DNA of 64,000 nucleotides from the NCBI RefSeq assembly GCF_963506605.1, contig NC_083287.1, forward strand, positions 12,214,001-12,278,000. The letters are read 5' to 3'. Below are positions 13,486-48,682 of the stretch, piece by piece. The stretch comes from Zootoca vivipara (Eukaryota). Position numbers and translations under genes: made by a program. Within the stretch, counting starts at the first letter, position 1; every line of letters starts with the position of its first letter. The notes under the pieces were generated by a model that saw only the letters and a list, made by a program, of their open reading frames with translations, searched no databases and was not told the DNA's origin.

Positions 13486-14559
13486 ATGGACGATTCTTCC
13501 ACGATGCCAGATTATGAAATAAGCACAACTTTTGACTATTCGGGTTTAGTATCCCTAGTCATTGACAAAAATGTGAAAAGATTCACCTTTTATTTTGTGC
13601 CACCGCTTTACTCTTTGGTGTTCATATTTGGCCTGCTGGGCAACTCACTGGTGGTTCTGATCCTCATCAGATACAAGAAACTCAAGAGCATGACCGATAT
13701 CTACCTGCTCAATTTAGCCATCTCGGACTTGCTTTTCATCTTCTCGCTCCCATTTTGGGCTTACTACGCAGCGCACGAGTGGATATTTGGAGATGCAATG
13801 TGCAAAATTCTCTCTGGGATCTACTGCGTAGGCTTCTACAGTGGAAGTTTTTTCATAATCCTTTTGACTATCGATAGATACCTGGCCATCGTCCATGCCG
13901 TGTTCGCATTAAAAGCCAGGACGATCACCTATGGCACCTTCACAAGCGTTGCCACTTGGGTGGTGGCCTTATTAGCCTCTCTGCCAGAATTTGTATTTCA
14001 TCATGTTCAAATGGAATCTGAGAGCCACAGCTGTACCATTCATTATCCCACCCAAAAGGAAAAAGAATGGAAGCAATTTATAACTTTGATGAAGTTCATT
14101 TTGGGCCTAGCCATTCCTGCAGTCATTATTATCTTCTCTTACATGCAGATTATAATGATTTTGATTAAGGGTAGAAATCAGAGAAAGCAGAAGGCTTTCA
14201 AGCTTATTGCTGTGATCATGGTTGTTTTTTTCCTCTTCTGGATGCCATTCAACATTGCCCTGTTGGTGCGGACCTTTCAAGATTCATTTTTCCCATCTAA
14301 CTCAGAGAATAATATTGAGGGCAAGGTAACTTTAGGAATTGAAGTCACAAGAGTAATTGCTCTGGTTCACTGTTGCATCAACCCTGTGATTTATGCCTTT
14401 CTGGGTGAAAGATTTCGGAAATATATCTCTATCTTTTTCCAAAAGTGCATGTTAGTTCTTCTCTGTAGGCTCTGCCCTGGTCGAAATTATCCTATTTTGG
14501 AACGGTCTACTTCCTCCTATATAAGTTCAACAGAACATGACATTTCTATTGGTTTGTGA
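13486..14559 (+). CDS. C-C chemokine receptor, CCR5/CCR2-like, paralog A (357 aa, single coding exon)
   Basis: 7TM ORF with [43 protein letters not shown] and C-terminal ISIGL. Likely start is AAG-ATG-G at 13486; the track's TTG start lies in the intron/acceptor region. Confidence 0.93.
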   Translation: MDDSSTMPDYEISTTFDYSGLVSLVIDKNVKRFTFYFVPPLYSLVFIFGLLGNSLVVLILIRYKKLKSMTDIYLLNLAISDLLFIFSLPFWAYYAAHEWIFGDAMCKILSGIYCVGFYSGSFFIILLTIDRYLAIVHAVFALKARTITYGTFTSVATWVVALLASLPEFVFHHVQMESESHSCTIHYPTQKEKEWKQFITLMKFILGLAIPAVIIIFSYMQIIMILIKGRNQRKQKAFKLIAVIMVVFFLFWMPFNIALLVRTFQDSFFPSNSENNIEGKVTLGIEVTRVIALVHCCINPVIYAFLGERFRKYISIFFQKCMLVLLCRLCPGRNYPILERSTSSYISSTEHDISIGL

Positions 14560-14612
14560 AGTGATTTCCAGTTGTCTTTGTCCATCTTTTCTTTCTAAAC
14601 ACTTTAGTTGGT

Positions 14613-14848
14613 TAGGGTTGCCATACATCCGGGATTTCCAGGACGTAGCTGGAATATAGCAGTCAGAAACATTGTCCGGGGGGAAATCGCTTAAATGTCC
14701 AGGCAAATCCGTACGTATGGCAATTCATGTCGGGAGTCTAGTTTGGGGCAAGTTTTCTTAAAGCTGCTTCTTCTTTTTTGAGATTTTGCAAAAGAAGCTC
14801 AACAACTCTTGCGTCCAGATTTTCACTTTTTGAAATTTGCCAACCCTA
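14613..14848. mobile_element. hAT-type MITE in the 3'UTR of CCR paralog A
   Basis: TIR TAGGGTTGCCA / TGCCAACCCTA; duplicated GTTGGT flanks; absent at the homologous site behind paralog B. Confidence 0.8.
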
Positions 14849-15392
14849 TGTTGGTATATCGGACCAAAGTATGTCAGACTGCTAAGGGGGAAATGAAAAC
14901 AATATGTTAGGATACTGTATAACCTTTGGAGGGAAACCATTCCTGTGCCCCTTCCCCCTTGGGGCTCCTGTGGGGGAAGGGAGCAGGCAGATCTGGTAAG
15001 ACATATTTTGATGAACTACAATTCCTGTTCTGATAGGTGGTGCAAAACTGCTCACACAAATTATTGAAAAATACTGAGTTTGTACAAATAAATGCCGAAC
15101 TCTAGCTTTGGAAGTCAGTTGTATCAGGAAAGTGAAGACAATTCCTATCAAATTTCTCTCAATATGAGATGCAGAAATGGATCCAAGTATCACGAAGCCC
15201 AGGATGTTAATGAGTTATCTCTGCCATTATCTGGTCTTCCAATTGAGGGAGCCATAGGGACAGGTTCATATGGACATCTGAAGCAGCCTTAAGTGGGCCA
15301 GAACATTGGTCCATTATTAACCCAATACCTGGATAGGCTGCAGCTGATTCAGGACTTCAGGCTGAGTTTTTCTCAAGTCCTGCTACCAGAAG

Positions 15393-16338
15393 GCCCTATA
15401 AGTGAAGATGTCAAGGACTGAAGTTAGTACTTTCTCCATTTAAGCACCACCAAATTCAATGGAACTTACTCCCAGTTCACTCTGTATATAACTGCAGTCA
15501 TGCTGATTCTAATAAATTCTGTATTATGCCACCTTTGGGAGAGTGCATATTATTTTACAATAGATCAACACAGGAGCTGTTTTTCATCCTGGGGTTCTGG
15601 GAAATGTCACGATGTCTCCTGTACTACCTACACCTCTGTCAGGCGCTGCTCGTCATATTCCTAAACTTTTGGCTTCTTTGGAGAAGAGGTCTTACGCCAT
15701 TAAGGTACATCAAACCATGATCAGCATTTTCTTGTTTGACAAAGGAAATGGCAAGGTCAGAACTCTGAGCAATGCTTATTCTCGTGAACCTGCCCTGGAA
15801 TCCAACCGGAGAGAATGTGGTTGGTGACAGATGGAGCAGAAAAAATGGTTGGGAGGGGAAAGGCAAGGAATCCGGCTGCCTCTCTCTCCACCCATCAGAA
15901 GCTCCTCCATTCACAACGGCATCTTCTCAAAACCAATTTAGTATTTTTTTAAAAATGTGACTGCAGCAGCTCCCTTACACACGTGGTTTCCCCTTGAGAT
16001 AATGACATGGTAAGATAAAGACAAGGTTCTATTACTATTATTATTATCTTTAATAAGCCATATTAAAACTGTATTTTACTGGGGGAATGGCAAATAAGAG
16101 TTATGTCCAGTTTAATAGGTGCTATAGTTGGAAATATCCACACCTCTGCAGATTTCCAGGACGTCACCCATCATTTTTAAAGGACATATACTGTAGATGC
16201 AATTTTGGTCACTGAGTTCGAGCCAGAAAACAACCCTGTCAACATGCTGTACTCTACATTACAGTATTCAATTTCTTTTGAAAGATGACTAAGGGCCTCA
16301 CTCAGGAAAGAGTTTTGTGGAAGCCTATTGGACTCAGA
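15393..16338 (+). repeat. Partner of the inverted duplication; part also tandemly repeated at ~16420-16735 and homologous to ~27570-27925 behind paralog B
   Basis: Direct sequence comparison. Confidence 0.85.
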
Positions 16339-17061
16339 TAGTCCTCTCAGAACCTGCTCCAAGTACCGTGATGCCCAAGATGATATATAGTTCCTCTGTT
16401 ACCTGATCTTCTACTAGAGGGAGACATTAAGCCCTGGATAGTTGCATATGAACATTTGAAGCTGGCATTGGCAGTGTTATACTCTTGGTTCATTAATCCA
16501 GTATTGTCTACTTGGATAAGCAGCAACTGATCCAGGAATTCAGACTGAGTTTTCCTCAAGTCCTGCTACCAGAAGGCCCTATAAGTGAAGATGTCAAGGA
16601 CTGAAGTTGGAACCTTCTGCACGTAAAGCACCTTTGAGTTCAATGGAACTTACTCCTCGTTTACTCTGTATACAACTGCATTCATGTGGATCCTAATAAA
16701 TAGTGTATTGTGCTATCTTTGGGAGAGTATTGTATTAATACAGCTGTTTGCCTTTTTATACCTTTAGAAGACACCTGAAGGCAGTCCTGTATAGGGAAGT
16801 TTTTTTAAAAAAAATATATTAATGTGTTATTATGTTTTTATATATGTTGGAAGACGCCTAGGTGGCTGGGGCAACCTAGTCAGATGGGTGGGGTACAAAT
16901 AGTAAAATTATTATTGTTGTTGTTGAATTGGACGTCCCTATTTTCATCGGATAAATATTTGAGAGTATGATGGCCTATGAAGAAATGTTGCAGCATTTGG
17001 GGATTTTTAGTTTAGAGCAGTGATTCCCAACCTTTTTTTGGCCATGCCCCACCTGACCATC

Positions 17062-17564
17062 TGTCAGGAGGAAGGCAAGTAAGAGGAGACAAGATAGAAG
17101 AGGAGATGTCACATGACTGTCAGAGACATGGCCGGCAGAGAGGACTCAGCAGAGGGGGAGGAAGAGGCAGAGGAAAACAGGAACTTGGTTCATTCACACT
17201 ACGAAAGTGAGACAAGCCCTTCTTGCTCTGGGTTGCTGCCTGTAAGTTTTCGCAGCAGCACAGAGATGAAGGAGCAGGATGCAGGTGGTCGAAGGGGGTT
17301 GAATTCAACTCCAGAGGAGGCGGCATTGGCTGCACCTGAGTCTCCAAGAAGTAGGCAGACCAGCAGGAAGCGGGGGGCGGGCTTGGCGTATATCTGGCCT
17401 TGGAAGGGGCTGGAAGAAGCCAGTTGAGTCAACTGACTCTTTGACAGTGAGGTATGAGTTGTGGGAAGCTCGGATTGCTGAAAGCCTGTTGTTGATAAAT
17501 AAACCTCAACTTGTCGAGCTGCTGGTGTGTCGTGTCTTGTGTGGGAGAAGTGCTAAACCTGACA
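17062..17564 (+). mobile_element. Solo-LTR-like element
   Basis: TGTCAGG...CCTGACA termini, AATAAA ~65 bp from the 3' end; no clear TSD. Confidence 0.55.
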
Positions 17565-18454
17565 GCGACATGGCACGAAGATCAAGTGGAAAGAGAAAGG
17601 TTTATCTCCCTGTCTCATAGCAATAGAACTTGTGGACGTCAAATGGAGCAGAATGTTTGAAGATTCGGAACAGATGAAATAAAGCACTTCTTCATGAGGT
17701 GTGTAGTTAAATCATGGAACTCATTCCTGCGGGAGGCAGTGGTGGCCACCAAATTCATGGAGAGGGCTATTGAAGGCTACTAGCCATGTGGCCATGCTCT
17801 GTCTCCACAGAGGAAGCAATGCTTCTGAATACCAGTTTCAGGGAACGGCAAGGGGTGAGGAGAGTGCTCTAGTGCTCACGCCCTGCTTGCTGCTTTCTCA
17901 CAGGAACCTGCTTGGCCACTGTGAGGACGGGATGCTCAACCAATAGCCTGATCCAGCATGTACCAATAGCCTGATCCAGCAGGCTCCTCTTATGAGTTTC
18001 ATTTAATAGTCTTATTTAAAACAGTTCCTTAACATCAGCCAACTCGTCCGTTTGTATTTACTGAATTATCTGGACCCTGTTCGCACACACAACTTGTGGG
18101 TAGTGCGTGGACCCCTTCTCCGTGGTTATGTCCTCCGTTGCAGCATTGTGCACATAAATACAGGAACCACACGAGTGGGGTGAAAACCAGCCGTGTGGGT
18201 CCTTCTCACTCAAGTGCCATTTGGAAAGGAGAGAGGGTACAATTTATGAATGGAAAGGAATTGGCCACATTCCTCAGGTTTTGTCAAAGCTTCGGAAAAG
18301 CTATTCCTCCCCCAGTTGCAGCAAGAGCAGAGAAAACAAGGTAGAGTCCTTTTTAATGGGATTTACTCATATATAATAGTGAGAGGCAACAGAACGCCGC
18401 AATGCTGCATTCCTCTTCTCCTTCAATGTCAGGAGAATGGGGTGGGGTGGGGGG

Positions 18455-18903
18455 CAGTGCCGGATTTACATATAACCTAAAGAAGCTATAGCTTAAGGCC
18501 CCACTCTCTTGGAGGGGTCCAAAAAAATTTAAAGGAAAAAAACTGGATGTACATTTCCAAAATATAAGAAAAAAAGCAAATAAAATAAAACCTACATACA
18601 GCAACAGTGTTTTGTGTTGTGTAGGCTCCTATGGTGTAAGTAATCCCCCCCCCCCCCGGCTAGCCTGCTCCCTAAAATATCACTGGTTTGCTCATTTCTA
18701 TATCAATTACTTTGATAAAATACATATTTTGTTATGTGCAAATGGCTTTAGATACCTATTAGGTCCATAAATTACCATATAGCATATATTCAACACAAAA
18801 AACAGCGACAATTTGTTGTTGACAAAGGACAGCTGGACATAAACAGTAAAGGGCCCCATTCTCTTCAGTAGCTTAGGGCCTCATCAAACCTAAATCCGGC
18901 CCG
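18455..18903. mobile_element. hAT-type non-autonomous DNA transposon
   Basis: TIR CAGTGCCGGATTTA / TAAATCCGGCCCG. Confidence 0.7.
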
Positions 18904-19302
18904 GGGGGGGGGGCGCCTGATCTCCACCATTCCTCTTCCCTCCTGTCCCCTTGAGTCCGATCCCTGACAAGTTTGATATCTGGGAGTTTTCGGCAATGTC
19001 ATTGGACCTTGCCAAAGCAAAACAGTTTCCTTGCTGCAAAAGGCATGTATGAATGGGGGCCAAGTTTCCACCTCATATGTAGTAACTGGGCTTGCGTTTT
19101 GAGAATCTTTGCAGCACAGCTTTGATGCTCTTATACATGAGGACCTATTGAAAGAATCACCCCAAATGTGCTACCCACAGACAGTTATATAGCTGAAGCT
19201 TTGGCAACCAGGCAAGTACAGCACTTGTCGGACAACCTTGAAGCAGTATTGAGACTCTTGTGTGAAGGCATTGGGGCAGGGAGTTATGAAGACTGCTTCA
19301 GA

Positions 19303-19392
<90 letters not shown>
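19303..19392. repeat. (AAT)n(TTA)n self-complementary microsatellite
   Basis: Direct observation; L2 tail. Confidence 0.95.
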
Positions 19393-20700
19393 GTACCCTG
19401 CCCATCCGGCTGGGTCTTCCCAGCCACTCTGGGTGGCTTCCAACAAAGATTAAAAATACTGTACATTAAAATGTCACACATTTAAAACTTCCCTAAACAG
19501 GGCTGCCTTCTAAATGTCAGGTTTATCTCTTTGACATCTGATGGGAGGGCATTCCACAGGGCGGGTGCCACCACCGAGAAGGCCCTCTGCCTGGTTTCCC
19601 TGTAGCTTTGCTTCTCGCAGTGAGGGTACCACCACAAGACCCTCAGCGCTGGACCTCAGTGTCCGGGCAGAACGATGGGGGTGGAGACGCTCCTTCAGGT
19701 ATACTGGGCCAAGGCTGTTTAGGGCTTTAAAGGTCAGCACCAACACTTTGAATTGTGCTCAGAAACGTACAGGGAGCCAATGTAGGTGTTTCAGGACTGA
19801 TGTTATATGGTCTCGGTGGCCACTCCCAGTCACCAGTCTAGCTGCCGCATTCTGGATTAGTTGCCGTTTCCAGGTCACCTTCAAAGGTAGCCCCACGTAG
19901 ACTGCATTGCAGTAGTCCAAGCGGGAGATAACTAGAGCATGCACCGCTCTGGTGAGAGAGTCCACTGGCAGGTAGGGTCTCAGCCTGCGTACCAGATGGA
20001 GCTGGTAGACAGCTGCCCTGGATACAGAATTGACCTGTGTCTCCATGGACAGCTGTGAGTCCAAAATGACTCCCGGGCTGCGCACCTGGTCCTTCAGGGG
20101 CACAGTTATCCCATCCAGGGAGTCCTCTACACCAGCCTGCCCCCTGTCCCCCACGAACAGTACTTCTGTCTTGTCAGGATTCAACCTCAATCCATTAGCC
20201 GCCATCCATACTCCAACCACCTCCACGCACTCACACCGGACCTTCACTGCCTTCACTGGTTCTGATTTAAAAGAGAAGTAGAGCTGGGTGTCAGGGATGA
20301 TCCAGTGGCTTCCGGTTCCCCAGAGGGGAAACTGGCCGGGGGGGGGGGGGAGAGACATTGTCAGGAGACTCTCGTGGTGATTGTTGTGAAGAGAGGAAGC
20401 CCCGTCAGACCAGACCCGGAGGCAGGTATGCTCTACAAACAACGACTAAGCCTGCCTCCTCGGTAATGACATGGTCTAGTCTTAGCGTAACTCCTCCTCC
20501 TGCCCATGATCACTGAGATTGGATGTCCCAGTGCACCCCCCCCGGTGGAACTTGCCATTCTATTGGCTGGGGCCCACTCCCAGGCAACCCTGATCCCGCC
20601 CCTTAGAAACAAAATGCAAACTACTGTATACAACAACCAATAAAACAATAAAACAATAAAAAACAAAAACAAAACAACAGTTATACTAAAATTAACCCCC
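19340..20700 (-). mobile_element. L2 LINE: 3' RT/tail portion (to ~20293) joined to a probable 5' portion
   Basis: DTQLY...LRLNPDKTEVL...SRLDYCNAVYVGLP...QNAAARLVTG; L2 tail cccagccggatgggcagggta(TAA)n. Confidence 0.85.
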
Positions 20701-20859
20701 AACCAGATATCCATCCCACCCACCCCAACAGAGCAAAAAGGGGGGGGGGAATAAGAAAAAGTGCCACCGACTGCTTAAGGACATTATAAAACACATAAAA
20801 TCCCATATAAACAGTCCTGTGAGACTTCGTTAGATTGCTTTTGGTATTTTTTGCAATTC

Positions 20860-25971: not shown

Positions 25972-27030
25972 ATGGACAATTTTGCCATGATGCCAGATGA
26001 TGAAACAACTTTTGACTATGGTCCGGATACGGCCCCAGTTCACAGCGAGGCGGGAAAAACATTTGCATCTAATTTTGTGCCACCGCTTTACTCTTTGGTG
26101 TTCATATTTGGCCTGCTGGGCAACTCATTGGTGGTTCTGATCCTCATCAGATATAAGAAGCTCAAGAACATGACTGATATCTACCTGCTCAATTTAGCCA
26201 TCTCGGACTTGCTTTTTATCTTCTCACTCCCATTTTGGGCTCATTATGCAGCCCGCGAGTGGGTATTTGGAGATGCAATGTGCAAAATTCTCTCTGGGGT
26301 CTATTGTGTAGGCTTCTACAGTGGAAGCTTTTTTATCATCCTTTTGACTATCGATAGATACCTAGCCATCGTCCACGCAGTGTTCGCATTAAAAGCCAGG
26401 ACGATCACCTATGGCACCTTCACAAGCGTCGTCACTTGGGTTGTGGCCTTATTAGCCTCTGTGCCAGAATTTATATTTCACCATGTTCAAAAGGAATCTG
26501 AGACCTACAAATGTACCATTCATTATCCCTCTGAAAATGAAAAAGAATGGAAGCAATTTCTAATTTTAATGAAGTTCATTTTGGGCCTAGCTCTTCCCGC
26601 AGTCATTATTGTCTTCTGTTACATGCGGATTATAAAGATTTTGATTAAGGGTAGAAATGAGAGAAAGCAGAAGGCTGTCAAGCTTATTTCTGTAATCATG
26701 ATTGTTTACTTCCTTTTATGGATGCCATAAAACATCACTCTTTTGTTGCAGACCTATCAAGATTCAGTTTTCTCATGTGGCTTAAAAAATGATTGTGAGA
26801 GCAAGTTATCTGTAGCCATTGCTGTGACAGAGGCAATTGCTATGATCCACTGTTGCATCAACCCTGTGATCTATGCCTTTGTGGGGGAAAAATTTAGGAA
26901 ATATCTCTCTATTTTTTCCCAGAGGTGTATGTCAGCTCTCCTCTGTCCAGGTCGCGATCACCCTCATTTAGACCGGTCTACTTCATCCTATACCAGTTCA
27001 ACAGAACATGACATTTCTGTTGGTTTGTGA
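25972..27030 (+). pseudogene. C-C chemokine receptor CCR5-like, paralog B, with a single premature stop (TAA 26728-26730) in TM6
   Basis: ORFs 25918-26730 and 26743-27030 are in the same frame. TAA replaces the TAC (Tyr of WMPYNI) seen in paralog C. Otherwise intact, 352 aa, ending ISVGL. Confidence 0.88.
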
Positions 27031-29459: not shown

Positions 29460-29762
29460 CAGAGCCAGCCCAAGACATTTCGCCACCTGAGGCAAACCAC
29501 AAAATGGAATGCACACCCTGCCAGGGAAGAAGGAACAAGGGGAATTAAAGATCTACATTGGGGACAAGGGTGGGAGGAGACCACCAGTGCTTCCTATTAG
29601 CCAAGAGGCTGCTGTAGAGGCGGCATTCTGCAGCCGTCGCTGCCCCTGCTGTGGCAACGGTGGGGGTGGGGTGCATTTCTTGGGAGGTCAGATCTCCTGC
29701 CCCTGTGGATCCCGCCACCTGAGGCAGCCGCCCCACTTTGCTTCATAGGTGGGCTGGCCCTG
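29460..29762. mobile_element. hAT-type MITE
   Basis: TIR CAGAGCCAGCCCA / TGGGCTGGCCCTG; 8-bp TSD GGTAACT(A/G). Confidence 0.75.
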
Positions 29763-30261
29763 GGTAACTGAGCTTCTCTTCTGAAGATCTCTGCTGCCTA
29801 ATGGTGGTGCTTTTCTACACGAGGACCTCCTAGGTTAATTTTATTAAGACAAGTGACTCGCTGAAAGACTCTGTCGGAAGAATCATCCTCAATCTGGGCT
29901 ACCCAGAGATGTTGCTCTCCTGATGAAGTTTGGGGCCTCTGGTTTAGTGAGCACTTGTCACATATTAAGCCTATACTTCATGGATTACTAAGACTCTTAT
30001 ATGAAGACACTGGGCAAGACAACTCTGGGAGGTTTTTTGGTCTTTTTTGAGTGGGTTAAATGAACAACCACATGTTCACTTCTGATATCATTCTCAGAAG
30101 TGATATCCTTATCATAATCCGCTGAGTGAGAAACCTTTTAAAGTGAGCACTTGTCAGACAAACATTTCAAGGCAGGCAGTTTTGAAGACCACCTCAAAAA
30201 TACTTTGTGGACAGCCCTGTGAGTTGATGGGAATGGGTTTTTGGGAATTATTCGATTTGGC

Positions 30262-30566
30262 AACATAAACTGTAACTCAAAATTGTGCAATGAAAGTCTA
30301 GCAAGATACTGTACTTCAGTTTTCAAAACCATCTGTAGTAGTACAGAAATAGCTTTTGCTGACCAAATGATTACTGTTAGAAGGGAACTACCGTAGTCTT
30401 GATTTTGAGCAGTAATGTTGGGCAGCTAGAAATTTGCAGAACAATTCCTTCTTCACAGAGAAAAGGGCTTATTTCTTACTTTCTGGTTTTTACAATGTTC
30501 CTGTTCCAAAGAATCTAGCTGTCGCCATCATCTTTTAAAAGCAAGCAACTTTGTAGATTGGTAAGT
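30262..30566 (+). promoter_or_regulatory. Putative promoter / non-coding exon 1 of CCR paralog C (donor TTG|GTAAGT at 30561)
   Basis: Homologous block with C/EBP-like ATTGTGCAAT at 30281. Confidence 0.6.
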
Positions 30567-31873
30567 TAATTTAGGGGGGGGCAGTTGCCTTTATGTGAAT
30601 AAACAGTGAAAAAGTAAACATGGATATGAATGTTGCACGAATTTCTAAGCCTGTAAACTGACCTACTGAGATGTAAAAAGGGCATCTATTTCATACCACA
30701 ATTTGTGAATATTGATGAATAATGAACCAGTTAGCACTTTCCTGTTATGTTCATATTGTTCAGAACATTGGAATTCCATAGTCAGTTTTTGTAATCAAAG
30801 TTCTTTAATTTTTACTTCCATTGCTGGATTTTACCAATGATAAGGTAAGTGGTGCTAACATTTAAACTAATATACATGCCTTGGCTACCACAAAAGCCTG
30901 CTTGTAATTGACCCAAATACCACTTTCCAGTACTCTTGAATGTGCAGAGGAAGCTAAAGCTCCAATCCTATAGCCAGTTACCCACGAGGAAGCCCCACCG
31001 AATTCAATGTGTATGTACAGGACTGCCCAGTGAATGTACAACTTGCCCCAGTTGGAGCTGACCCATTTACACAATTTCAGTGATGTGAAAGTAGAGTTTT
31101 GAAATTAGTATCACCCTAGTTCTTAAAACACTATCCGGAGGAAATGAATATGTAGGCAGAGTATTTTGAAAGTCGACCAGAGTTTTGTTTGTTTTGTTTT
31201 TAAAGTAAAGTAATACTCTGCATAGGTTAGCCAAAGTCTAATGAAAGCAGGACCTCTGCACTTTACAGTTGTGTAGATGACCCTGAATATTAATTTATTA
31301 ATTAATAAAAATGTATAAATACATCACCTGGTTGCAACCCCCCCCAACAACCCTCAAAGTGGTTTTGTATTATTAATATGTGGTTTTATAATACAAAAAG
31401 AGAGAGTAAAGGACTCCTGGACGGTTAGGTCCAGTCAAAGGCAACTTTGAAAGTTTCTGAAATGTGGTATCCAATATTTGTGGTTTAGCAGCTGTGTCAG
31501 CGTTGCTTTTTACAGAAAAGCCCTTGATAAAGACAATCATGCCAAAACGTGCTGGACATATCTATAATAAAACATGCCCTTGTTTTTAAATCTTTGAGAC
31601 ATATTTCTCCTTTTTGTTCTGCACTTCTGGATACTTCCTTTTTCATGTTGTTTGCTTGTTTCTGAAGGATTGTTTGTTGCCAAAGGCAACAGACATGCTG
31701 TAAAATGGCTGTTTTAACCATGTCTACTCAGAAGTAAATCCCACTGGTAAGTGGGGTTAGGATTTCAACCTTAACCTGCTTCCTATTGTGAATTTTTAAC
31801 TCATGGTTTTTCCTTTCACTTGGTTAGAAGTGATCACTTTGGTATCTTCTTATTTTGTTACTACTCCTTAAAG

Positions 31874-31963
31874 CATAGCTGTCAAACTTTCCCTTTTCTC
31901 GTGAGGAAGCCTATTCAGCATAAGGGAATTTTCCTTAAAAAAAGGGAGAACTTGACAGCTATG
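31874..31963. mobile_element. 90-bp hAT-type MITE
   Basis: TIR CATAGCTGTCAA / TTGACAGCTATG; perfect 8-bp TSD CCTTAAAG. Confidence 0.88.
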
Positions 31964-32086
31964 CCTTAAAGTAGTCTATTTCCCCCCAAAGTAGGAAGAA
32001 CCAGCAGGATTCGACTGCCTATTTTTGACCACCCAAAGCCTGCATTTTAAATTAAATTTTAAATTCCTCCCCTCCTCTCCACATTA

Positions 32087-32423
32087 CAGTGGTACCTCGG
32101 TTTACAAACACAATTTGTTCCGGAAGTCTGTACTTAAACTGAAGCGAACTTAACCTGAAGCAAACTTTCCCATTGAAAGTAATGGAAAGTGGATTAATCT
32201 GTTCCAGACGGGTCTGCAGAATATTCAACCTGAAGCGTACTTAACCCCAGGTATGAGTGTAATTGGTTCCGGAAGTCCGTACTTAAACTGAAGCGAACTT
32301 AACCTGAAGCGAACTTTCCCATTGAAAGTAATGGAAAGTGGATTAATCCGTTCCAGACAGGTCCGCAGAGTACTTAAACTGAAAATACTCAAACCGAGGC
32401 GCACTTAAACCGAGGTATGACTG
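32087..32423. mobile_element. Tc1/mariner-type MITE (2 internal units)
   Basis: TA-CAGTGGTACCTCGG...CCGAGGTATGACTG-TA. Confidence 0.85.
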
Positions 32424-33104
32424 TAAACCGTCCCTTTCCACTGCCTAGCTCTGTCTGCCCGGTTGGCAGCAGCTCTGATGTACAATATTTCAGGCAGGAT
32501 TCTCTCTCAGCCCTGCCTGGAGACACCAGTGACTGAACCTGGGACCTTCTCCATGCAAAGCCGATGCTGTAACACTGAGTTATGGCCCTTCTAGAACTTT
32601 ATACTGAACTGCAATCCTAACCCCATTTATCTGGGACTAAACGCCACTGAATTCAGCGGGAGCTACTTTTCTGAGCAGACACTTTGGTTTGCAGCCATAG
32701 AAGGCTTGGGTGATGTGCTCTTAAGTCCCTTAATTCATTTTGTTTTTAAGGCGTCATAAGGCTCTTCTGTTTGTGCAGAACACTAACTGAGTGATCTGTT
32801 TCCTTATGCTGGAAGGGAACCCAAAGGAATGCAGTTGATTTGCAGATATCTGTTGATGACTGAGATTTTGGTGTCTATTGTGTGCTACACAAAAGAGAAC
32901 ATACCGGTATATTTCTGCATTAACGAAAGACAAAGTGGCACACAGACTTGTGCAATTGGAGTTTAACAGAAAATACCAGCTGAAAGTGTGAATGAATGGC
33001 AGAATGGATTGAGGTGTGTTTGAACATCGCTAACCAATAAAGACATTCAGTGGGAGAAGGTGGTCAGAAATAAAACCAGAGCATTATAGGCAAATATGTT
33101 AACA

Positions 33105-34170
33105 TCTGCAGGGTTCTGTCTCGGGTTTGCTGTTGTTCAACATCATTATAAACAACTTGGATGATGGTGTTGAGGGGATTCTTATCAAATTTGCAGATGA
33201 GACCAAACTGGGACGGGTAGGCAATGCCGCAGAAGACAGAAGTGGAATTCAAGTTGACCTAAGCAGATTGGAGAACTGGGCTAAATCTAACAAAACAAAT
33301 ATCAATAGGGTCAAATGTATGGTTCTACACTGAGGCAGGAAGAACCAGCTGCACAAATATAAGATGGGAGACACCTGGCTTGCCAGAAGTACATATGCAA
33401 AGGACCTAGAGGTCTAAGTAGACCACAAGCTTAACATGAGTCAACAGTGTGATGCTGCAGCAGCAGCAAAAAAAGCTAATGCTATTCTAGGCTGCATCAA
33501 AAGAAGTCTAACGTCCCAATCAAGGGATGTAATAGTGATAAAGGTCCAGTCCATTAGGTCCAGTCGTGACCGACTCTGGGGTTGCGTGCTCATCTCGCAT
33601 TATTGGCCGAGGGAGCCGGCGTACAGCTTCCAGGTCATATGGCCAGCATGACAAAGCCACTTCTGGCGAACCAGAACAGCACACGGAAACGGCATTTACC
33701 TTCCCGCTGTAGCGGTCCCTATTTATCTACTTGCACTTTGACATGCTTTCGAACTGCTAGGTTGGCAGGAGCTGGGACCGAGCAACGGGAGCCCACCCCG
33801 TTGCAGGGATTCGAACCGCCAACCTTCTGATCAGCAAGCCCTAGGCTCTGTGGTTTAACCAACAGCGCCACCTGCGTCCCATAATAGTGATAGCCACCTT
33901 CAAATACCTAAAGCGTTGTCACATGGAGGAAAGAGCTTGTCTTCTCCTGCTCTAGAGGCTAGGAACCAAACCAATGCATTCAAGTTATAAGGACAGGACA
34001 TTTCAACTAAACATCAAAGAGTTTTCCAACAGCATGAGCTGTTTGACAATGGAACAGACTCCAAGAGATAGTGGTCTCTCCTTCCATGGAGGTTTTCAAG
34101 GAGAGGTTGACATGTGTGATCTAGTTGAGATTCCTGCATTGCAGAGGGTTTGACTATATGACGCTCTATG
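33105..34170 (+). mobile_element. CR1 LINE 3' part, split by a Sauria SINE
   Basis: LFNIIINNLDDGVEGILIKFADETKLG (RT motif), KKANAILGCI, CR1 tail CTATGATTCTGTG. Confidence 0.85.
33541..33880 (-). mobile_element. Sauria SINE inserted in CR1, TSD TAATAGTGATA
   Basis: Direct repeats at 33530-33540 and 33882-33892. Confidence 0.9.
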
Positions 34171-34396
34171 ATTCTGTGATCCATTTCCCCTCCTCTCTCT
34201 TTTTTGCTTCTTTATTCTTATTCTTTCTTAATATTTAGTCTGTTTGCCAATATCTTGATCCTGATAAGCAGACTAAATAAATATTCAACATTAGCAATAG
34301 ATTTTTTTAAAAAAATAAATAAATTATATATTACAATAAAGTTTCATGCTGATATCTTTTATGATGTCTGTGAATTCTTTATTCTCAGGGAAGAAG

Positions 34397-35464
34397 ATGG
34401 ATGATTATATTGATTTGCCAGAAGATTATGGTCTAACCACATCTTATTACTATGATACGGGAGTAGCCCCAGTCCGCATCTTGGCAGGGAAATCATTTGC
34501 ATCTTATGTTGTGCCACCACTTTACTCTTTGGTGTTCATCTTTGGCCTGCTGGGCAACTCACTGGTGGTTCTGATCCTCATCAGATACAAGAAGCTCAAG
34601 AACATGACCGATATCTACCTGCTCAATTTAGCCATCTCGGACTTGCTTTTCATCTTCTCGCTCCCATTTTGGGCTTATTACGCAGCGCACGAGTGGATAT
34701 TTGGAGATGCAATGTGCAAAATTCTCTCTGGGATCTATTACGTAGGCTTCTACAGCGGAAGTTTTTTTATCATCCTTTTGACTTTCGATAGATACCTGGC
34801 CATCGTCCATGCAGTCTTCGCATTAAAAGCCAGGACGATCACCTATGGCACCTTCACAAGTGTCATAACTTGGGTTGTGGCCTTATTAGCCTCTGTGCCA
34901 GAATTTGTATTTCACCATGTTCAAACGGAATCTGAGACCTACAAATGTACCATTCATTATCCTTCAAAAAATGAAAATGATTGGAAGCAATTTCTAACTT
35001 TAATGAGGGTTGTCTTGGGCCTAGCTCTTCCCGCAGTCATCATTGTTTTCTGTTACATGCAGATTATAAAGATTTTGATTAAGGGTAGAAATGAGAGAAA
35101 GCAGAAGGCTGTCAAGCTTATTTCTGTAATCATGATTGTTTACTTCCTTTTATGGATGCCATACAACATCACTCTTTTGTTGCAGACCTATCAAGATTCA
35201 ATTTTCTCATGTGGCTTAAAAAATGATTGTGAGGGAAAGTTATCTGTAGCCATTGGGGTGACAGAGATAATTGCCATGATCCACTGTTGCATCAACCCTG
35301 TGATCTATGCCTTTGTAGGGGAAAAGTTTAGGAAATATCTCTCTATCTTTTTCCAGAAGTGTACATTAGTTCCTCTCTGTCCAGGTCGCGATCACCCTAG
35401 TTTAGACCGGTCTACTTCCTCCTACATGAGTACAACAGAACATGAACTTTCTATTGGTTTGTAA
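34397..35464 (+). CDS. C-C chemokine receptor CCR5-like, paralog C (355 aa)
   Basis: Intact 7TM ORF with DRYLAIV and NPVIY. Acceptor ttctttattctcag ends at 34388, followed by GGAAGAAG-ATG. Tyr/acid-rich N-terminus. Confidence 0.94.
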
Positions 35465-35886
35465 AGTGATTTCCAGTTGTGTGTTGTTTTTGTTTGTGTG
35501 CCTCTGTTTAGTTGTTATGCCTGGGAGGTATTTCAGACTTCTAAGGAGCAGGGGACCATCATGATGAACTCCTGCACTTTAAAATTTGTAAGTATACCAC
35601 TGCCAGGCTAGGCATGGTCAAATCTGTCAGTTTTCAATTTCAGCAAGTTTCTGATTTTTCCATTACTGCATTATGTTTTGTTCTCTACATTTCCACAGCA
35701 GTTTGTGCTTTTTTTTTTTTTAAAAAAAGTGTCATCATATAAATTCACCAGTATTTCCACTAATATTTTTTCTATGCAATGTCTTCTAACATACACATTT
35801 TTGCAAACTGATTTTCTGCAATATAATGCACTTTCATATGCCATTTTCACTAACGTGCATTCTAATAGGCATTTTATATCCTAGCA

Positions 35887-36222: not shown

Positions 36223-36276
36223 TCCTAGCATATTCATTTTTGTACACCTTAATTGGCCAAAGAACTGAACTGCAAA

Positions 36277-40288: not shown

Positions 40289-40289
40289 T

Positions 40290-40343
<54 letters not shown>
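40289..40343. repeat. (TA)n(GA)n compound microsatellite
   Basis: Direct observation. Confidence 0.95.
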
Positions 40344-40346
<3 letters not shown>

Positions 40347-42475: not shown

Positions 42476-43071
42476 GCCGTATGCCATTTTAAATACGTGG
42501 TATGATAACGATTTCGAATGAAAAAGAGGAGGCTTACTATTGGATTAGCAAAATGCCCATCACTTTGGGCACTGAAGGAGAGACCTGAATTTTGCAGGGA
42601 ACCCTGCGGGCATCTATGCGCACTGCTTGTGGGCACATCTACCCATGGGATTCCTGCTAGGGAGGGCAGGCTATTCGGTGAACAGATTTTGCCCTCGCTC
42701 CAACAACGTCCCTGAAAATGTTGCCGAGTTTCCCCATAGGAATGAATGGCTCCTATCTGTTTAAGTGGAATAAATTAAAGGGAAGCCATAGCTATCTGCT
42801 CCCTGCACCTGGACATCCTAGCCTTCAGGGGAAATGACTGTAGCTTGGTGAGGAGGTGTCTGTTTTCCATGTAGAAGGTCCCCGGTCTGACCTCAGCCAT
42901 CTCTGGTTGGGGCTGGAAATACCCCTTTATGAAAACCCTGTCAGCGTAGAGATAGTATTCATGGTTGGTCTGATTTGGTATTAGGAAGTTTCCTATATTC
43001 TCATCAAAGTCTTCATTTACCTAGGCTGTATAGCTCCATCCTGGGTTTTCCAATCATGCTTTGGTTCCAGC

Positions 43072-43204
43072 CAGTGCTGTTTTTCTAGAAAAGGAGGTGC
43101 CACGAACTTCTGCCGTGTTCACTTAGAATGGCAATGGCACCTACCTGAGAGGTGCCGGAGCTGAGATCCGATGAGCTGGCTGAAAAAAGAAAATAAAAGC
43201 CCTG
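43072..43204. mobile_element. hAT-type MITE
   Basis: CAGTGCT / AGCCCTG ends; TSD GTTC(C/T)AGC. Confidence 0.6.
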
Positions 43205-46200
43205 GTTCTAGCATTGGTTATTTAGATTGAGCTACAATCCACCGTGTTCCCAGTCACGCCCCAGCTTTAAAGCTGCTACATGTCTATCAAGCACAACGCT
43301 AACTCAGGGATCAAAGACAGAGGCGATGAAGTGGGATAATTTAGTTGCAAACCAGGCCGTATCCAGTTTACCGTTTGGTCCATTCACCTCAGTGCTTGAA
43401 GTGGGAAGAAAAAGAGGGTGTGTTAGTATTTTGGTCTGCTTTTTGATTTGTTCTGTTTTTGATCTTTTTGGAAAGAAGCAGGATGACATCCCACTTGCTG
43501 CCAACCAACTGTGAACACTGCATTTAAGGAAAGTGGCCGAGAGCGCCTCACCCATTAAATTTCAAACGCAATGCAATTATTGCTATTATATTTCTAGCCA
43601 ACTCTATGGTTATGAACTCTATGGTCCATAACACGATGATGACAATCATTGGGCCAAGCACACTAGAGTGGAAGCCCCAGAAGGAAGCCCCACTGAGTTC
43701 AAACGTGTATTAGAACTGGTCTGCTTCTGACTGTTCTTAGAAACACTTTACTAGGTCCATGTACTAAGTATGCATGGTAAAATCAGCAGCCTCTTTGCTA
43801 AAAAAAGAAAGGGGTGGGTGACATATTTTATACCATTATAAAGTGAAATCACAATGTTGTTAGAACGTGATGCTGATAATGCCAGGGTTGCAAGTTCAAT
43901 CCTCATATTGGATAGCTGCCATATTCCTGCACTGCAGGGGGTTGGACTAGATGATCCTCAGGGTCCCTTCCAACTCTACAATTCTATGCTGCTAACAAAT
44001 GCTCCTAAAACACAAGGCTCGTTTTGCAATTGGTAATACCCGAAAACAAGCCTCTCAGCTTCGCTGAAAATGTTGCCTTCCTCCCTACTGAAATCTGAAA
44101 TATCATTCTTGCAAAAGCACCATTATCTTTGAGTCACAGCTCCTCCAGCCAACCCCACCCTGTACTCTGTGATATGGAGATAACGACGACTTATCTTACA
44201 GAGTTGTGAGGAGGATTACATGTGTGTGTGTGTGTTAGCTTGCAAAATTCATTCGCTCTGGCAAATGAGGTTTGCCCACCTCTATACATCGAATGCAACC
44301 TAGCATTAATTATTGGCATGACTGGTGTTTAGCAACATTAAATATTCCTAGAGAGAGTCTAGTCAGTGGCTAAGTTCAATGTTTTGTCTTCAGCATTTAT
44401 GGAAGGTTGATGTACTTGTCTGTCTTGGCACATGAGTTTGCAAAAGCGGGTTAGTAAAATTTTTAGCACGTGTTATTAATTAATTAACAGGAAACTCTGG
44501 GAACTGCAGTTCTGGAAGGAGGGATGGAATGGTGTGTGTGTGTGTGTGCGTGCCTAACTGATCATTCTCTGCATACTCATTAAACTACTGTTCCCAGGAA
44601 TCTTTGCAGAACACCACAGTTAAAGCGGTATAGAGGCCATTATCAGGTGTTTTGCTGATCATTTTCTTGGGAAAATGTATGTGCACAGACATGAAGGCAA
44701 TTTAAACTATTATGTTCAATCCATTCCTGACACAGAAACACATCTTTCCCATAGAAAGCATATGCATTTTAAGTGGAAATCTAACCACTGGAACAGTTGC
44801 TCCATGGCTATTTATGTGGCTAGGATTGCACCATAAATCTTCAGTTAAATTATTGCAACAGTGCCTTCTTTCTGATTTTGTTAGTTCATTTCTGTAGCCC
44901 CTCTGTGTCTTCTTTTCACAAGAATTCATTATTCATGCTCATGTAGGATAACCTGCACAAACATCTCTTTTTGAAAGTTATAAAGGTAGTCTACCAACCA
45001 AGAACGACGCTTCCAAGAGTTTTAGGGCTGCTTCAGGAATTATCTAGTTAACAAATGAGCATGTCATGATGAGTACGTTCTACAGCAGGGATGATAAACC
45101 TATGGGCCACATTTGCACCTAGCAAATGTGCCTGTCCTGATATGAGGACAATGTAACAGAGATGGCGAGTCGCTGACCCTCCAGATGTTGCTGTACTACA
45201 GCACCCCACCCTTCATCACACCAGCTGAAGATGATGAGTCAACAACCTCTGGAGGCACAGAGGTTTCCCATCTGCATGGTATAGGAAGCCATGACCAATT
45301 GTTTATTCCTGTGCCATGGAGTTGCAGGAAACGCTTATTTCAAAACACGAATAGCAGGGCAAAGAACTGCAAAACGTATTTTGGAAGTCCTAAGGAGGTT
45401 GAGATTTGGCTTCCATCAGCAGCCCTTTGTGCAATGTGGCAAACTGCTCTTGAAACCAAGGCAGTTTTTTTCTCTTGTAGCTGATTTTTAACTAAAGCAG
45501 CCTTGGGAAACTTGTTAAGTTTGAATTAAGGGGCACCTTGATTTGTTTAACTAAAAATTCACACACACCAGCTCCCACCTCCCCCCCGTGAGCAAAACAA
45601 CAATCCAACATTATTGTGTGTAGGGCAGAGGTTGAGAAGAAAAATATTTGGGTGGGGGACAGCTTATTTATTCATTTAATAACATTGCTTTACTGGCTTG
45701 GTTATAGAAGGGTTAAACGGCCCCTATCATATCACCTGACGAACAATTTTTATTTTCCATTTCCCAGTCTCAGACTCTACACAGTTCCCAGGTGACACCA
45801 GAACTTCAGTGGCCATTTCTGCATCTTCCAGGGTGACCCCATTTCCCATAGGGACATTATTCCCTGTGTTGGTACTGTTTAAATCATGTTAAAAAGTAAT
45901 TTACACCTTGTGTTCAAGACTGCCTTCAACCTTTTGCAGGGTTGTAACTGTTCCTAGAGGCGAGGCAAGAAACCTTCAGCTCGAGGTGAGTTCTTGTATT
46001 TCTAGGTCAATAGTGTCGAACATCTGCCCTTTGGGCCAACCTGGGCCTACCAGGCTTCCCCATTTGGTCTGTCAGGCCATTTGGGGCAAGCCAGAAGCAC
46101 CCACACTACACCTGATGTCATACAGGTAAGGAAAGAGCTTGACTAGAAGGGCACAGCTTGGGGACCTAGCACTAAGCATATTTGTTCTCCCTGGCGGACT

Positions 46201-47605
46201 TTAGGCTTTCCAATTTCAATGCCAAAATTCAGTGCCCCCTGCCTCTCACCTTCTGTTCCAAGTCATAGTTGTGTCCCCCTTCCAGCTCGGTGCTCATTGT
46301 GGGTAAACTGGTTGCATTCCCTTATATTCACCTCTGGGAGACAGATGCTGCTGAGGTCATGGGCAGCAACACAAAGTAGGAGTTAAGAGACAGGGGGAAA
46401 TGGGAGTAAGCAAAACAGGGTGATGTTACAAGGCGTAGGAGCATGTAAGCGATTTAAAAATACTTTTTGCATCACCATCGATTAGTTGATTTTAGTTCCA
46501 GAAAAACAACGTATCACCTAGTCACAGTAGAAATGTCATGCGGTTCCTACCCCAAAAATGAAGGAACGAGCAAACCACAAGGCAAAGTTTGAGATGGTTA
46601 AGCCCTCTGTCCTTCAACCACATTCGAGCTTGAAAAATGTAACTATAGCTCCTCCAAATGGCAGAAAAGTAGTTGCAATGCACTCTCTTCGTTTCTACAG
46701 GGCTGACTACTAAAGAAATCCTCAGCCAACTTTTGCCCAGTGATATACTGTACACATTTACTAACATACTTTGTCAGAGAATGGGGTGGGTGGAGACAAA
46801 ACTTTTCACAAGATAACCATTTCATGTTGATTTTTTTCTGAGCTTCATTACAGCAACTGGGCATCCAACAGTTTCTTCACGTTTTGTTAAGATACTTTTC
46901 GGGCTGTACAAAATTTGGGTCAACATCCAAGGGTGATTTCATATGGCCATCTTTTTTGGGCGACTTTAATAAAAATGAAACTACTATATACTAACAATGA
47001 TGAAGATGCTTTCATTCAGCCTCTTTCATTTTGGATACGGTACGACACTTTTTCCAACAGAGGCTGCTCATTTGTTAAACTGCAAGTGATCAGTGTAGAA
47101 TCTACTGAGTGATGCAATGGGTTTCCAAGGTTTACATTAGACTACCTGTAATTCCTCTCTCTCTTCATGATTGTAATGATATGTACAAAATATACGTACC
47201 GTACAATGTGGGATTCAAAATGTGCTGAAACAGTGCTGGGGCACCAAGCAAACTATAATGGAAAGAATGGCATTTTGGCAATAGGCTCACTGCTTATAAT
47301 CACTCCTATACAACTGTTTCTGCACAGATACCCAATGTTGTTATTATTGAGTTGCATAATTGCACATCTGTAGATTGATGAAGTCCCAGCAGTTATTGAT
47401 CTTTAATAAGCAGGTGCTTAGCCCAAACATGAAAACATCTGCATGAACAAAATCTTTTGTTTTCTGTATTTTGATTTCTCCCCTCCTGTGTTGAAAGTTC
47501 AGTATATTCTCCTATGTACGGAAACCAGCATTTTATTATTACTGTGCATGCAGTTTGGATGTGTAAATATAAATGAACATATCTTCTACAATTGCAGAGA
47601 ACAAG

Positions 47606-48682
47606 ATGTCCATTACTATGAGCACATCAGACTACGGAGATGTAACAACCACAGAATACATTTATGACGAAACAGCAGAACCATGCCCAAGTGACAATGT
47701 TAATGAATTTGCTTCCCAGTTCCTGCCACCGCTTTACTCTTTGGTGCTCATATTTGGCTTGCTGGGCAACTCACTGGTGGTGCTGATCCTCATCAGATAT
47801 AAGAAACTCAAGAACATGACCGATATCTACCTGCTCAATTTAGCCCTCTCGGACCTGCTTTTCATCTTCACACTCCCATTTTGGGCTTATTACGCAGCCC
47901 ACGAGTGGATATTTGGAGATGCAATGTGCAAAATTCTCTCTGGGATCTATTATGTAGGCTTCTACAGCGGAAGTTTTTTCATAATCCTTTTGACGATCGA
48001 TCGATATCTAGCCATCGTCCATGCGGTGTTTGCATTAAAAGCCCGGACAGTTACCTATGGCATCCTCACAAGCGTTGTCATGTGGGGCGTGGCATTCCTA
48101 GCCTCTGTGCCGGTATTGGTCTTCAACAGATTACAAAAGGAAAACGATCGTTCAGTGTGCACGCCTCATTTTTCTTATGAAACTCAGATCGGCTGGAACC
48201 AGTTCTTTACACTGAAAATGAACCTTATAGGCCTGATATTTCCAATGATCGTCATGACCTTCTGTTATGCACAGATCATAAAAACTCTAATGAAATGCAG
48301 GAATGACAAGAAGAGCAAAGCGGTCCGGCTGATTTTTATCATCATGATAGTTTATTTCATTTTTTGGGCCCCGTACAACATTGTTCTTCTGCTACGGACA
48401 TTCCAAGATGCATTTGATCTCAGTAATTGTGCCTCTATTAGTAATTTGGCTATAGCAGCACAAGCGACAGAAACAATTGCAATGGCTCACTGCTGCATCA
48501 ATCCTGTGATCTATGCTTTTGCTGGCGAGAAGTTCAGAAAATATGTTTGCTGCCTTTTCCGAAAGCATGTGGCTCTCCACCTTCCAAAAACATGCCTCTC
48601 TCTGTATACAGAGCCTCTGGAACGTGCCAGTTCCACATACTCCCAGTCTACTGGGGAGCATGACATGTCAGCGGTATTGTAG
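47606..48682 (+). CDS. CCR5: C-C chemokine receptor type 5-like, paralog D, canonical (358 aa)
   Basis: EPC N-terminal Cys, TLP (TxP) motif, [16 protein letters not shown] (Glu7.39), tail [14 protein letters not shown] resembling human CCR5; acceptor attgcag|agaacaagATG. One-to-one orthology within CCR1/2/3/5 cannot be proven from this window, so the symbol is provisional. Confidence 0.85.

What the first reader, a model, noticed from the sequence alone, without database searches (positions are those of the whole stretch)
13486..48682. Expanded lizard CCR array with rewired extracellular disulfides: N-terminus-ECL3 bridge lost, apparently replaced by an intra-ECL3 Cys-x5-Cys
Seen: paralog D keeps the N-terminal Cys (EPC, 47684) and one ECL3 Cys (48428). 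A, B and C all have Val at the aligned N-terminal position (14 residues before PPLY) and no other N-terminal Cys. B and C carry two ECL3 Cys (SCGLKNDC; 26776/26794 and 35210/35228). A has lost both in a gap-free alignment (TCT 14296, ATT 14314). Established: nearly all chemokine receptors staple the N-terminus to ECL3/TM7 (CCR5 C20-C269), shaping the chemokine docking site; CXCR6 is a known exception, and intra-ECL3 Cx5C bridges occur in melanocortin receptors. Inference: the cysteines change in pairs, which suggests a selected structural rewiring and a derived receptor subfamily with a free N-terminus and altered ligand range.
Basis: partly seen in the sequence, partly recalled or inferred. 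Interest (0 to 1): 0.82.

Follow-up and report, generated by a model that had tools for sequence, protein, structure and literature searches.

The report
Squamate CCR2/5-like receptors with rewired disulfides
Four tandem chemokine-receptor genes of a lacertid lizard include three from an old, squamate-wide subfamily that dropped the hallmark N-terminus-to-helix-7 cysteine bridge and carries a cysteine pair inside extracellular loop 3 (or none), so nature has tested whether that bridge is needed.

Summary
The window holds four + strand, single-exon CCR2/CCR5-like genes. D has the canonical cysteine pair, one in the N-terminus and one in ECL3. A, B and C have Val at the N-terminal Cys column. 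B and C carry Cys-x5-Cys in ECL3 and A has no ECL3 cysteine.

The pattern is not local. A maximum-likelihood tree of 77 sauropsid relatives, built without the trait columns, puts all 31 'rewired' sequences on one branch (support 100/100). They come from geckos, skinks, cordylids, a teiid, an amphisbaenian, lacertids, an anguid and iguanians. Turtles and birds are all canonical, and every sampled squamate group also keeps a canonical D-type gene.

The states seen (N-terminal Cys, ECL3 Cys) are (1,1), (0,2) and (0,0). No sequence has an unpaired state. Both ECL3 cysteines were lost together six independent times, and A belongs to one of those losses.

Signalling motifs are invariant and dN/dS is 0.3-0.4 outside a gene-conversion tract, so these are constrained receptors.

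Three things are not shown: the intra-ECL3 disulfide itself, the ligand range, and the 5' exon structure. B has an in-frame stop, yet letters specific to B turn up in RNA reads.

I found no paper describing this. I class it as a new variant of a known kind.

The parts
13486..14559 (+). Paralog A, 357 aa. It belongs to the rewired subfamily and has secondarily lost both ECL3 cysteines: Val codon at 13558, TCT at 14296, ATT at 14314. It also has Arg in place of the TM7 Glu (motif VTR).
   Evidence: Its orthologues in Podarcis muralis (P0005) and Lacerta agilis (P0006) share the Cys-free loop and the Arg.
25972..27030 (+). Paralog B, rewired type: Val codon at 26038, ECL3 Cys codons at 26776 and 26794 (Cys-x5-Cys). 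The frame is interrupted by TAA at 26728-26730 in TM6.
   Evidence: The intact Podarcis muralis orthologue P0002 is 94% identical. Letters specific to B appear in RNA run X21.
34397..35464 (+). Paralog C, 355 aa, the intact rewired type: Val codon at 34472, ECL3 Cys codons at 35210 and 35228. A candidate splice acceptor (pyrimidine run then CAG) lies 8 nt before the ATG.
   Evidence: RNA reads cover the 3' half of the CDS at depth 2-7.
47573..48682 (+). Paralog D, 369 aa, canonical type: N-terminal Cys codon at 47684 (motif EPC) and ECL3/TM7 Cys codon at 48428.
   Evidence: It is 96% identical to Podarcis muralis P0031 and sits in the canonical squamate clade (support 100/98).
47726..48077 (+). 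Gene-conversion tract in D (approximate ends), running from TM1 to the start of TM4. The matching tracts are A 13600-13950, B 26080-26430 and C 34514-34865. It begins about 14 codons after the N-terminal Cys/Val codon and ends well before ECL3.
   Evidence: D versus A/B/C: nucleotide identity is 91-96% in the tract and 45-60% on either side. dS is 0.28-0.32 in the tract and above 2 downstream of it.

Best explanation
The window is a lacertid CCR2/CCR5-like tandem array that holds both members of an old squamate gene pair. D is the canonical receptor, with the N-terminus stapled to the top of TM7 (Cys1x22-Cys7x24). A, B and C belong to a sister subfamily that arose by duplication no later than the squamate crown. 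In the ancestor of that subfamily both canonical cysteines were replaced: Val or another residue follows the conserved Pro in the N-terminus, and two new cysteines appeared in ECL3 on either side of the old 7x24 position. These two cysteines most likely form a short intra-loop disulfide that stiffens ECL3 and the TM7 entry while the sulfotyrosine-type N-terminus is left untethered. The receptors keep everything needed for Gi-type signalling, so they most likely still act as leukocyte chemokine receptors with a changed docking geometry. When one ECL3 cysteine is lost the other is purged quickly, giving Cys-free derivatives such as A. Shown: the sequence states, the single origin, the paired changes, purifying selection and transcription. 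Inferred: the disulfide, the ligand class and the change in docking.
For: Family: Pfam 7tm_1 at E about 1e-67. The best solved relatives are CCR1, CCR5 and CCR2 at E 1e-118 to 1e-114, with the query Val aligned to CCR5 Cys20.
Single origin: the 31 rewired rows form one branch at 100/100 on a careful ML tree that left out the N-terminus and ECL3. The same branch gets SH-aLRT 100 on the TM4-to-C-terminus columns alone.
Paired states: 44 rows are (1,1), 21 are (0,2), 12 are (0,0) and none is unpaired. The extra Cys counted in Pogona lies at the edge of TM1.
Paired losses: 6 of 6 independent losses removed both cysteines, sign test p = 0.031. Some sit on short branches, for example Sceloporus against Phrynosoma.
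Loop conservation: the two cysteines are the only conserved loop residues, and the residues between them vary freely.
Constraint: D-R-Y-L-A, V-H, N-P-x-x-Y, the TM6 W-x-P, Cys3.25 and the ECL2 Cys are invariant in 28 rewired sequences. dN/dS is 0.30-0.42 from TM4 to the C-terminus.
Transcription: low-depth reads on C, oriented as for + strand RNA if the library is of the usual stranded type, and reads carrying B's letters.
Precedents: MC4R has an ECL3 C271-C277 bridge (PMC6685040). CXCR6 is the only human chemokine receptor that lacks the bridge (PMC12435897).
Against: No direct evidence shows that the two ECL3 cysteines are bonded. The AlphaFold2 model was poor (mean pLDDT 59) and no coordinates were available. 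No ligand or cell type is known. The 5' exon structure was not seen in reads. In this genome one of the two Cys-x5-Cys genes, B, carries a stop, and A has lost the pair. In lacertids, therefore, the pair is clearly dispensable for at least some copies. The N-terminus and ECL3 evolve fast (omega 0.6-1.3), as expected for ligand surfaces but also for relaxed constraint. The sister relation of the two squamate clades has only moderate support (84/91).
Confidence: 0.7

Rival explanations
1. The two ECL3 cysteines are functional but not bonded to each other. They might form a metal site, an intermolecular disulfide (receptor dimer or ligand), or a bond to another partner.
For: Paired gain and loss would also fit a two-ligand metal site or any function that needs both residues. 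No structural measurement was possible.
Against: No other extracellular Cys is free: Cys3.25 and the ECL2 Cys are invariant and pair with each other. The spacing varies from x2 to x6. A closed loop tolerates that, a defined metal site less so. Intra-ECL3 bridges of the same spacing are documented in MC4R (PMC6685040).
Confidence: 0.1
2. Relaxed constraint: the A/B/C lineage is a decaying set of duplicates, and the cysteine changes are neutral side effects.
For: B has a nonsense codon. A lost both cysteines and the TM7 Glu. The N-terminus and ECL3 have omega near 1.
Against: The subfamily is retained with intact frames in every sampled squamate group, geckos included. Signalling motifs are invariant. 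Omega is 0.3-0.4 outside the conversion tract and below 0.15 inside it. No unpaired Cys state occurs in 31 sequences. A's Arg and its Cys-free loop are shared by three lacertid genera.
Confidence: 0.07
3. A spliced upstream coding exon supplies an N-terminal cysteine, so the canonical bridge, or an equivalent, still exists.
For: The frame is open for 18-20 codons upstream of each ATG, and candidate acceptors lie there. Reads could not settle the 5' structure.
Against: The position of Cys1x22 is encoded in the same exon and is Val. The 7x24 Cys is also gone, and the ECL3 cysteines are even in number, so no partner is free. Nearly all rewired-type database models, from more than 15 species and mostly NCBI-named, start at the homologous Met; only the Lerista model is drawn with a longer N-terminus. 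The open upstream stretches contain no Cys.
Confidence: 0.03

Closest known systems
Human CCR5, CCR2 and CCR1 (solved structures 7o7f, 7xa3, 7vl8)
   Same: Same fold and family, about 55-60% identity over the whole length. Shared features are DRYLAIV, NPxxY, the TM3-ECL2 cysteines, an acidic Tyr-rich N-terminus and a Ser/Thr-rich tail ending in a hydrophobic G-L. The coding region is a single exon.
   Different: A, B and C lack both Cys20 and Cys269 (CCR5 numbering). B and C have two new cysteines in a loop that is 2 residues longer. D is fully canonical.
CXCR6
   Same: It is the only human chemokine receptor with no Cys at 1x22 and none at 7x24 (PMC12435897). It shows that a signalling chemokine receptor can work without the bridge.
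   Different: It is a single gene in a different branch (the CXC receptors). As far as I recall it has no replacement ECL3 pair. It is not related by descent to this loss.
Melanocortin receptors (MC4R C271-C277)
   Same: An intra-ECL3 Cys-x5-Cys bridge supported by mutagenesis (PMC6685040), with the same spacing as in B and C.
   Different: It is an unrelated class A branch that lacks the TM3-ECL2 bridge. MC4R may also have an N-terminus-to-ECL3 bridge (C40-C279), so it is not a replacement case.
Crocodilian CCR2-like (Alligator P0129, Crocodylus P0130)
   Same: An independent, paired loss of both canonical cysteines in a sauropsid CCR2/5-like receptor.
   Different: No ECL3 pair was gained. 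It lies on a separate branch of the tree.

Membership tests
Class A GPCR, CC chemokine receptor group CCR1/2/3/5 | Rhodopsin-type 7TM domain | tested here: met
   PF00001 at E 1e-57 to 1e-68 for A, B (N-terminal piece), C and D.
Class A GPCR, CC chemokine receptor group CCR1/2/3/5 | Closest relatives by sequence and by descent are CCR2/CCR5-type receptors | tested here: met
   Top solved matches are CCR1, CCR5 and CCR2. On the tree the genes nest among sauropsid CCR2/5-like genes.
Class A GPCR, CC chemokine receptor group CCR1/2/3/5 | G-protein signalling motifs (DRYLAIV, NPxxY, TM6 W-x-P) and TM3-ECL2 cysteines | tested here: met
   Invariant columns in 28 rewired sequences and present in A-D.
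Class A GPCR, CC chemokine receptor group CCR1/2/3/5 | N-terminus-to-TM7 disulfide cysteines (1x22 and 7x24), a hallmark of all human members but CXCR6 | tested here: not met
   Absent in A, B and C and present in D. I treat it as a hallmark rather than a condition of membership, because CXCR6 lacks it too (PMC12435897).
Class A GPCR, CC chemokine receptor group CCR1/2/3/5 | Binds CC chemokines and drives chemotaxis | not testable with these tools
GPCRs with an intra-ECL3 disulfide (MC4R-like arrangement) | Two cysteines within ECL3, 2-6 residues apart | tested here: met
   B and C have Cys-x5-Cys. Other members of the clade have x2, x3, x5 or x6.
GPCRs with an intra-ECL3 disulfide (MC4R-like arrangement) | The two cysteines are actually bonded | not testable with these tools
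   The AlphaFold2 model had mean pLDDT 59 and no coordinates were returned. The only support is the indirect evidence from paired loss.

The most novel reading that the evidence does not exclude
A squamate-wide receptor subfamily, present in every sampled squamate group including geckos, signals without the chemokine-receptor hallmark bridge. It has shifted its docking site (the region around the receptor Pro-Cys motif that contacts the chemokine's own disulfides) to a distinct, co-evolved set of squamate ligands. The lacertid locus then offers all three natural states side by side: stapled, ECL3-bridged and Cys-free.
Probability: 0.35. Interest if true: 0.7.

Novelty: new variant of a known kind. 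Interest (0 to 1): 0.6.

Why it matters
The N-terminus-to-TM7 bridge is treated as a near-universal, functionally essential feature of chemokine receptors. It is also described as part of the generic recognition hotspot for chemokines (PMC12435897, PMC7949164). A whole clade that replaced it and stayed under constraint in every sampled squamate group, and then lost the replacement pair six separate times, is a ready-made comparative experiment. It bears on what the bridge is for, on how ECL3 rigidity can substitute for it, and on how disulfide partners co-evolve. It also shows that 'CCR5-like' labels in squamate annotations hide two structurally different receptor types.

Tried and rejected
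Structure: AlphaFold2 on C with the 28-sequence clade alignment gave a poor model (mean pLDDT 59.3, pTM 0.53). No coordinate file reached the scripting machine, so the SG-SG distance could not be measured.

dN/dS therefore rests on the four paralogs in the window only, and no branch-site test was possible.

RNA: read laying on 29500-35499 gave only 0-7x depth on the CDS of C and no joint into it. Neither the acceptor nor any 5' exon could be seen. The deep piles at 31.9-32.5 kb and 33.5-33.9 kb are repeats.

Literature: three searches found no paper on squamate or reptile CCR cysteine patterns.

Pfam on three other ORFs in the window found nothing.

Not done: the third word search and the big representative search were not spent on snakes or tuatara. 
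Full report
WHAT IS THERE. The window carries four + strand, single-exon genes for rhodopsin-type receptors: A at 13486-14559, B at 25972-27030, C at 34397-35464 and D at 47573-48682. A tblastn of C and D against the window finds exactly these four and no fragments, and the window has no N runs. The closest solved structures are human CCR1, CCR5 and CCR2 (E 1e-118 to 1e-114). The closest database proteins are 'CCR5-like' and 'CCR2-like' proteins of lacertids and other squamates. On the conserved columns A is 90% identical to a Lacerta agilis protein. B is 94% and D 96% identical to Podarcis muralis proteins. The genome is therefore a lacertid, but neither of those two species.

CHECK OF THE OBSERVATION. 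D has Cys codons at 47684 (motif E-P-C, 14 residues before P-P-L-Y) and at 48428. A, B and C have Val at the aligned N-terminal position (13558, 26038, 34472). They have no Cys in the whole N-terminus, nor in the open frame upstream of the ATG. B and C have Cys codons at 26776/26794 and 35210/35228 (S-C-G-L-K-N-D-C). A has TCT and ATT at the same positions in a gap-free alignment. In the alignment to CCR5 the Val falls on Cys20, and the loop corresponds to the one that holds Cys269. The finding does not mention that B has an in-frame TAA at 26728-26730 where C has TAC. A separate note of this scan (s1-851047) does record it.

THE PATTERN IS SQUAMATE-WIDE. A word search with C and a profile search with 28 clade members returned the same picture. 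I tabulated the N-terminus and ECL3 for 77 sequences. The set holds the window's four genes, 28 other 'rewired' squamate proteins, 13 other canonical squamate proteins, 16 turtle, 2 crocodilian, 13 bird and 1 mammal sequence. All 31 rewired rows lack the N-terminal Cys. The conserved Pro is kept and is followed by V, I, F, M, A, D, E or G. Twenty-one of them have exactly two ECL3 cysteines, spaced as follows:
- x5 in lacertoids, iguanians, cordylids and a teiid
- x6 in Phrynocephalus
- x3 in geckos and Tiliqua
- x2 in Lerista

Ten have none. All sampled turtles and birds, and the D-type genes of every sampled squamate group, have the canonical one-plus-one arrangement. No sequence has an unpaired state. 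The single apparent exception (Pogona, D-type) is an extra Cys at the membrane edge of TM1. Neither new cysteine sits at the old 7x24 column. In the gecko form they lie two residues either side of it. The x5 forms have a 2-residue longer loop.

PHYLOGENY. A careful ML tree (LG+C20+F+G4, 290 columns, with the N-terminus and ECL3 left out so the trait cannot drive it) puts the 31 rewired rows on one branch at 100/100. The 14 canonical squamate rows form another branch at 100/98. Inside the rewired clade the grouping follows the major squamate groups: geckos; skinks and cordylids; lacertoids; an anguid plus iguanians. The two squamate clades are sisters relative to turtles, birds, crocodilians and the mammal, with moderate support (84/91). 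Geckos are included, so the duplication and the rewiring date at least to the squamate crown. No snake and no tuatara protein was among the 120 best hits of either search. I did not pursue this, so their status is open.

THE CYSTEINES CHANGE IN PAIRS. Within the rewired clade the ECL3 pair was lost six independent times:
- the lacertid A lineage together with a Podarcis raffonei paralog
- Sceloporus (its sister Phrynosoma keeps both)
- Elgaria
- an unnamed skink-like sequence
- one of three Hemicordylus paralogs
- Euleptes plus Sphaerodactylus

In all six both cysteines went (6 of 6, two-sided sign test p = 0.031). Several of these losses lie on short branches. That fits rapid purging of an unpaired partner. 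Crocodilians independently lost both canonical cysteines. The residues between the two cysteines vary freely, so the cysteines are the only conserved feature of the loop. This is the behaviour expected of disulfide partners, but it is indirect evidence.

CONSTRAINT AND EXPRESSION. In the 28-sequence clade alignment D-R-Y-L-A, V-H, N-P-x-x-Y, the TM6 W-x-P, Cys3.25 and the ECL2 Cys are all invariant. Among the window paralogs dN/dS (NG86) is 0.25-0.44 overall. It is 0.30-0.42 from TM4 to the C-terminus without ECL3, and 0.5-1.3 in the N-terminus and ECL3. So the core is under purifying selection and the ligand-facing parts evolve fast. This is not the omega near 1 that would refute the reading.

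RNA-seq runs carrying the same species label as the DNA runs that hold the stretch were laid on 29500-35499. About 6% of each run was read, and the tissue is unknown. Reads cover the 3' half of C at depth 2-7 with the first mate on the minus strand. This fits + strand RNA if the library is of the usual stranded type. In run X21 the reads carry G at 35201, A at 35234 and C at 35236. These are exactly paralog B's letters, so B appears to be transcribed despite its stop. I cannot say whether those transcripts carry the TAA.

THE UPSTREAM-EXON TEST. The reads were too thin at the 5' end to show an acceptor or a 5' exon. The indirect evidence is strong.
- The Val occupies the very position of Cys1x22, in the same exon.
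- The 7x24 Cys is gone as well.
- The remaining ECL3 cysteines are even in number, so none is left without a partner.
- The open frame upstream of each ATG contains no Cys.
- Nearly all rewired-type database models, from more than 15 species and mostly NCBI-named, start at the homologous Met. The Lerista model alone has a longer N-terminus, and it holds a Cys upstream of the homologous Met; I take its start to be mis-set.
- Candidate acceptors lie 8 nt (C) and 11 nt (A) before the ATG. From memory, human CCR5 also has an acceptor about 11 nt upstream of its ATG behind non-coding 5' exons.

GENE CONVERSION (seen in passing). From the P-P-L-Y of TM1 to the start of TM4, about 350 bp, D is 91-96% identical in nucleotides to A, B and C. 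On either side identity is 45-60%. dS is 0.28-0.32 inside the tract and above 2 downstream of it. The tract starts about 14 codons after the N-terminal Cys/Val codon and ends far before ECL3, so both cysteine-bearing modules escaped homogenisation. A tract reaching either module would have made a mismatched receptor. The clade result does not depend on the tract: a tree on the TM4-to-C-terminus columns alone gives the same single rewired branch (SH-aLRT 100).

HOW IT MOST LIKELY WORKS. These are most likely Gi-coupled leukocyte chemokine receptors. Their acidic, Tyr-rich N-terminus is no longer tied to TM7, and the TM6-TM7 loop is closed locally by a short disulfide. Some descendants, A among them, do without any bridge there. 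Precedents exist for each element. CXCR6 is the one human chemokine receptor without Cys1x22 and Cys7x24 (PMC12435897). MC4R has an ECL3 C271-C277 bridge (PMC6685040). The canonical bridge is reported as essential for chemokine binding in many receptors and as part of a generic recognition hotspot (PMC7949164, PMC12435897). A changed docking geometry or ligand set is therefore plausible but untested.

LIMITS.
- The AlphaFold2 model was poor (mean pLDDT 59) and no coordinates were available.
- Only the best 120 hits of each search could be inspected.
- No paper on this pattern was found, which is weak evidence of novelty.

VERDICT. It is a new variant of a known kind, of moderate to high interest.

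Noticed in passing
A 13600-13950, B 26080-26430, C 34514-34865, D 47726-48077: A gene-conversion tract of about 350 bp (TM1 to the start of TM4) is shared by all four paralogs, canonical D included. Nucleotide identity is 91-96% and dS about 0.3 inside, against dS above 2 downstream. It stops short of both cysteine-bearing segments.
   Followed up: yes
window 26728-26730: B has TAA where C has TAC (the TM6 Tyr of W-M-P-Y-N). The rest of B is intact and 94% identical to an intact Podarcis muralis orthologue. RNA reads in run X21 carry B's letters 40-75 nt downstream of the stop. It could be a young pseudogene, a null allele or an assembly error.
   Followed up: partly
window 14344-14346 region (A, TM7 motif V-T-R): A has Arg where B, C and D have the conserved TM7 Glu. 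The Podarcis muralis and Lacerta agilis A orthologues share both the Arg and the Cys-free loop. The A type is therefore a conserved lacertid receptor form and not a one-off decay.
   Followed up: partly
window 31900-32500 and 33500-33900: High-copy repeats between B and C. DNA word depth is 1e5-1e6, with many RNA reads on both strands carrying loose ends and back-joints. These are probably transposable-element copies expressed elsewhere in the genome.
   Followed up: no
P0129 (Alligator), P0130 (Crocodylus): The crocodilian 'CCR2' proteins have lost both canonical cysteines (T-P-F in the N-terminus, D-N-A in ECL3) without gaining an ECL3 pair. This is an independent paired loss.
   Followed up: partly
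(hit lists): No snake and no tuatara protein is among the best 120 hits of either search, in either the rewired or the D-type clade, although many snake genomes are annotated. This could be loss, strong divergence, or the word filter of the search.
   Followed up: no
window 19759-20442 (- strand): A 227-aa ORF between A and B has no Pfam match. Its nature was not established.
   Followed up: partly
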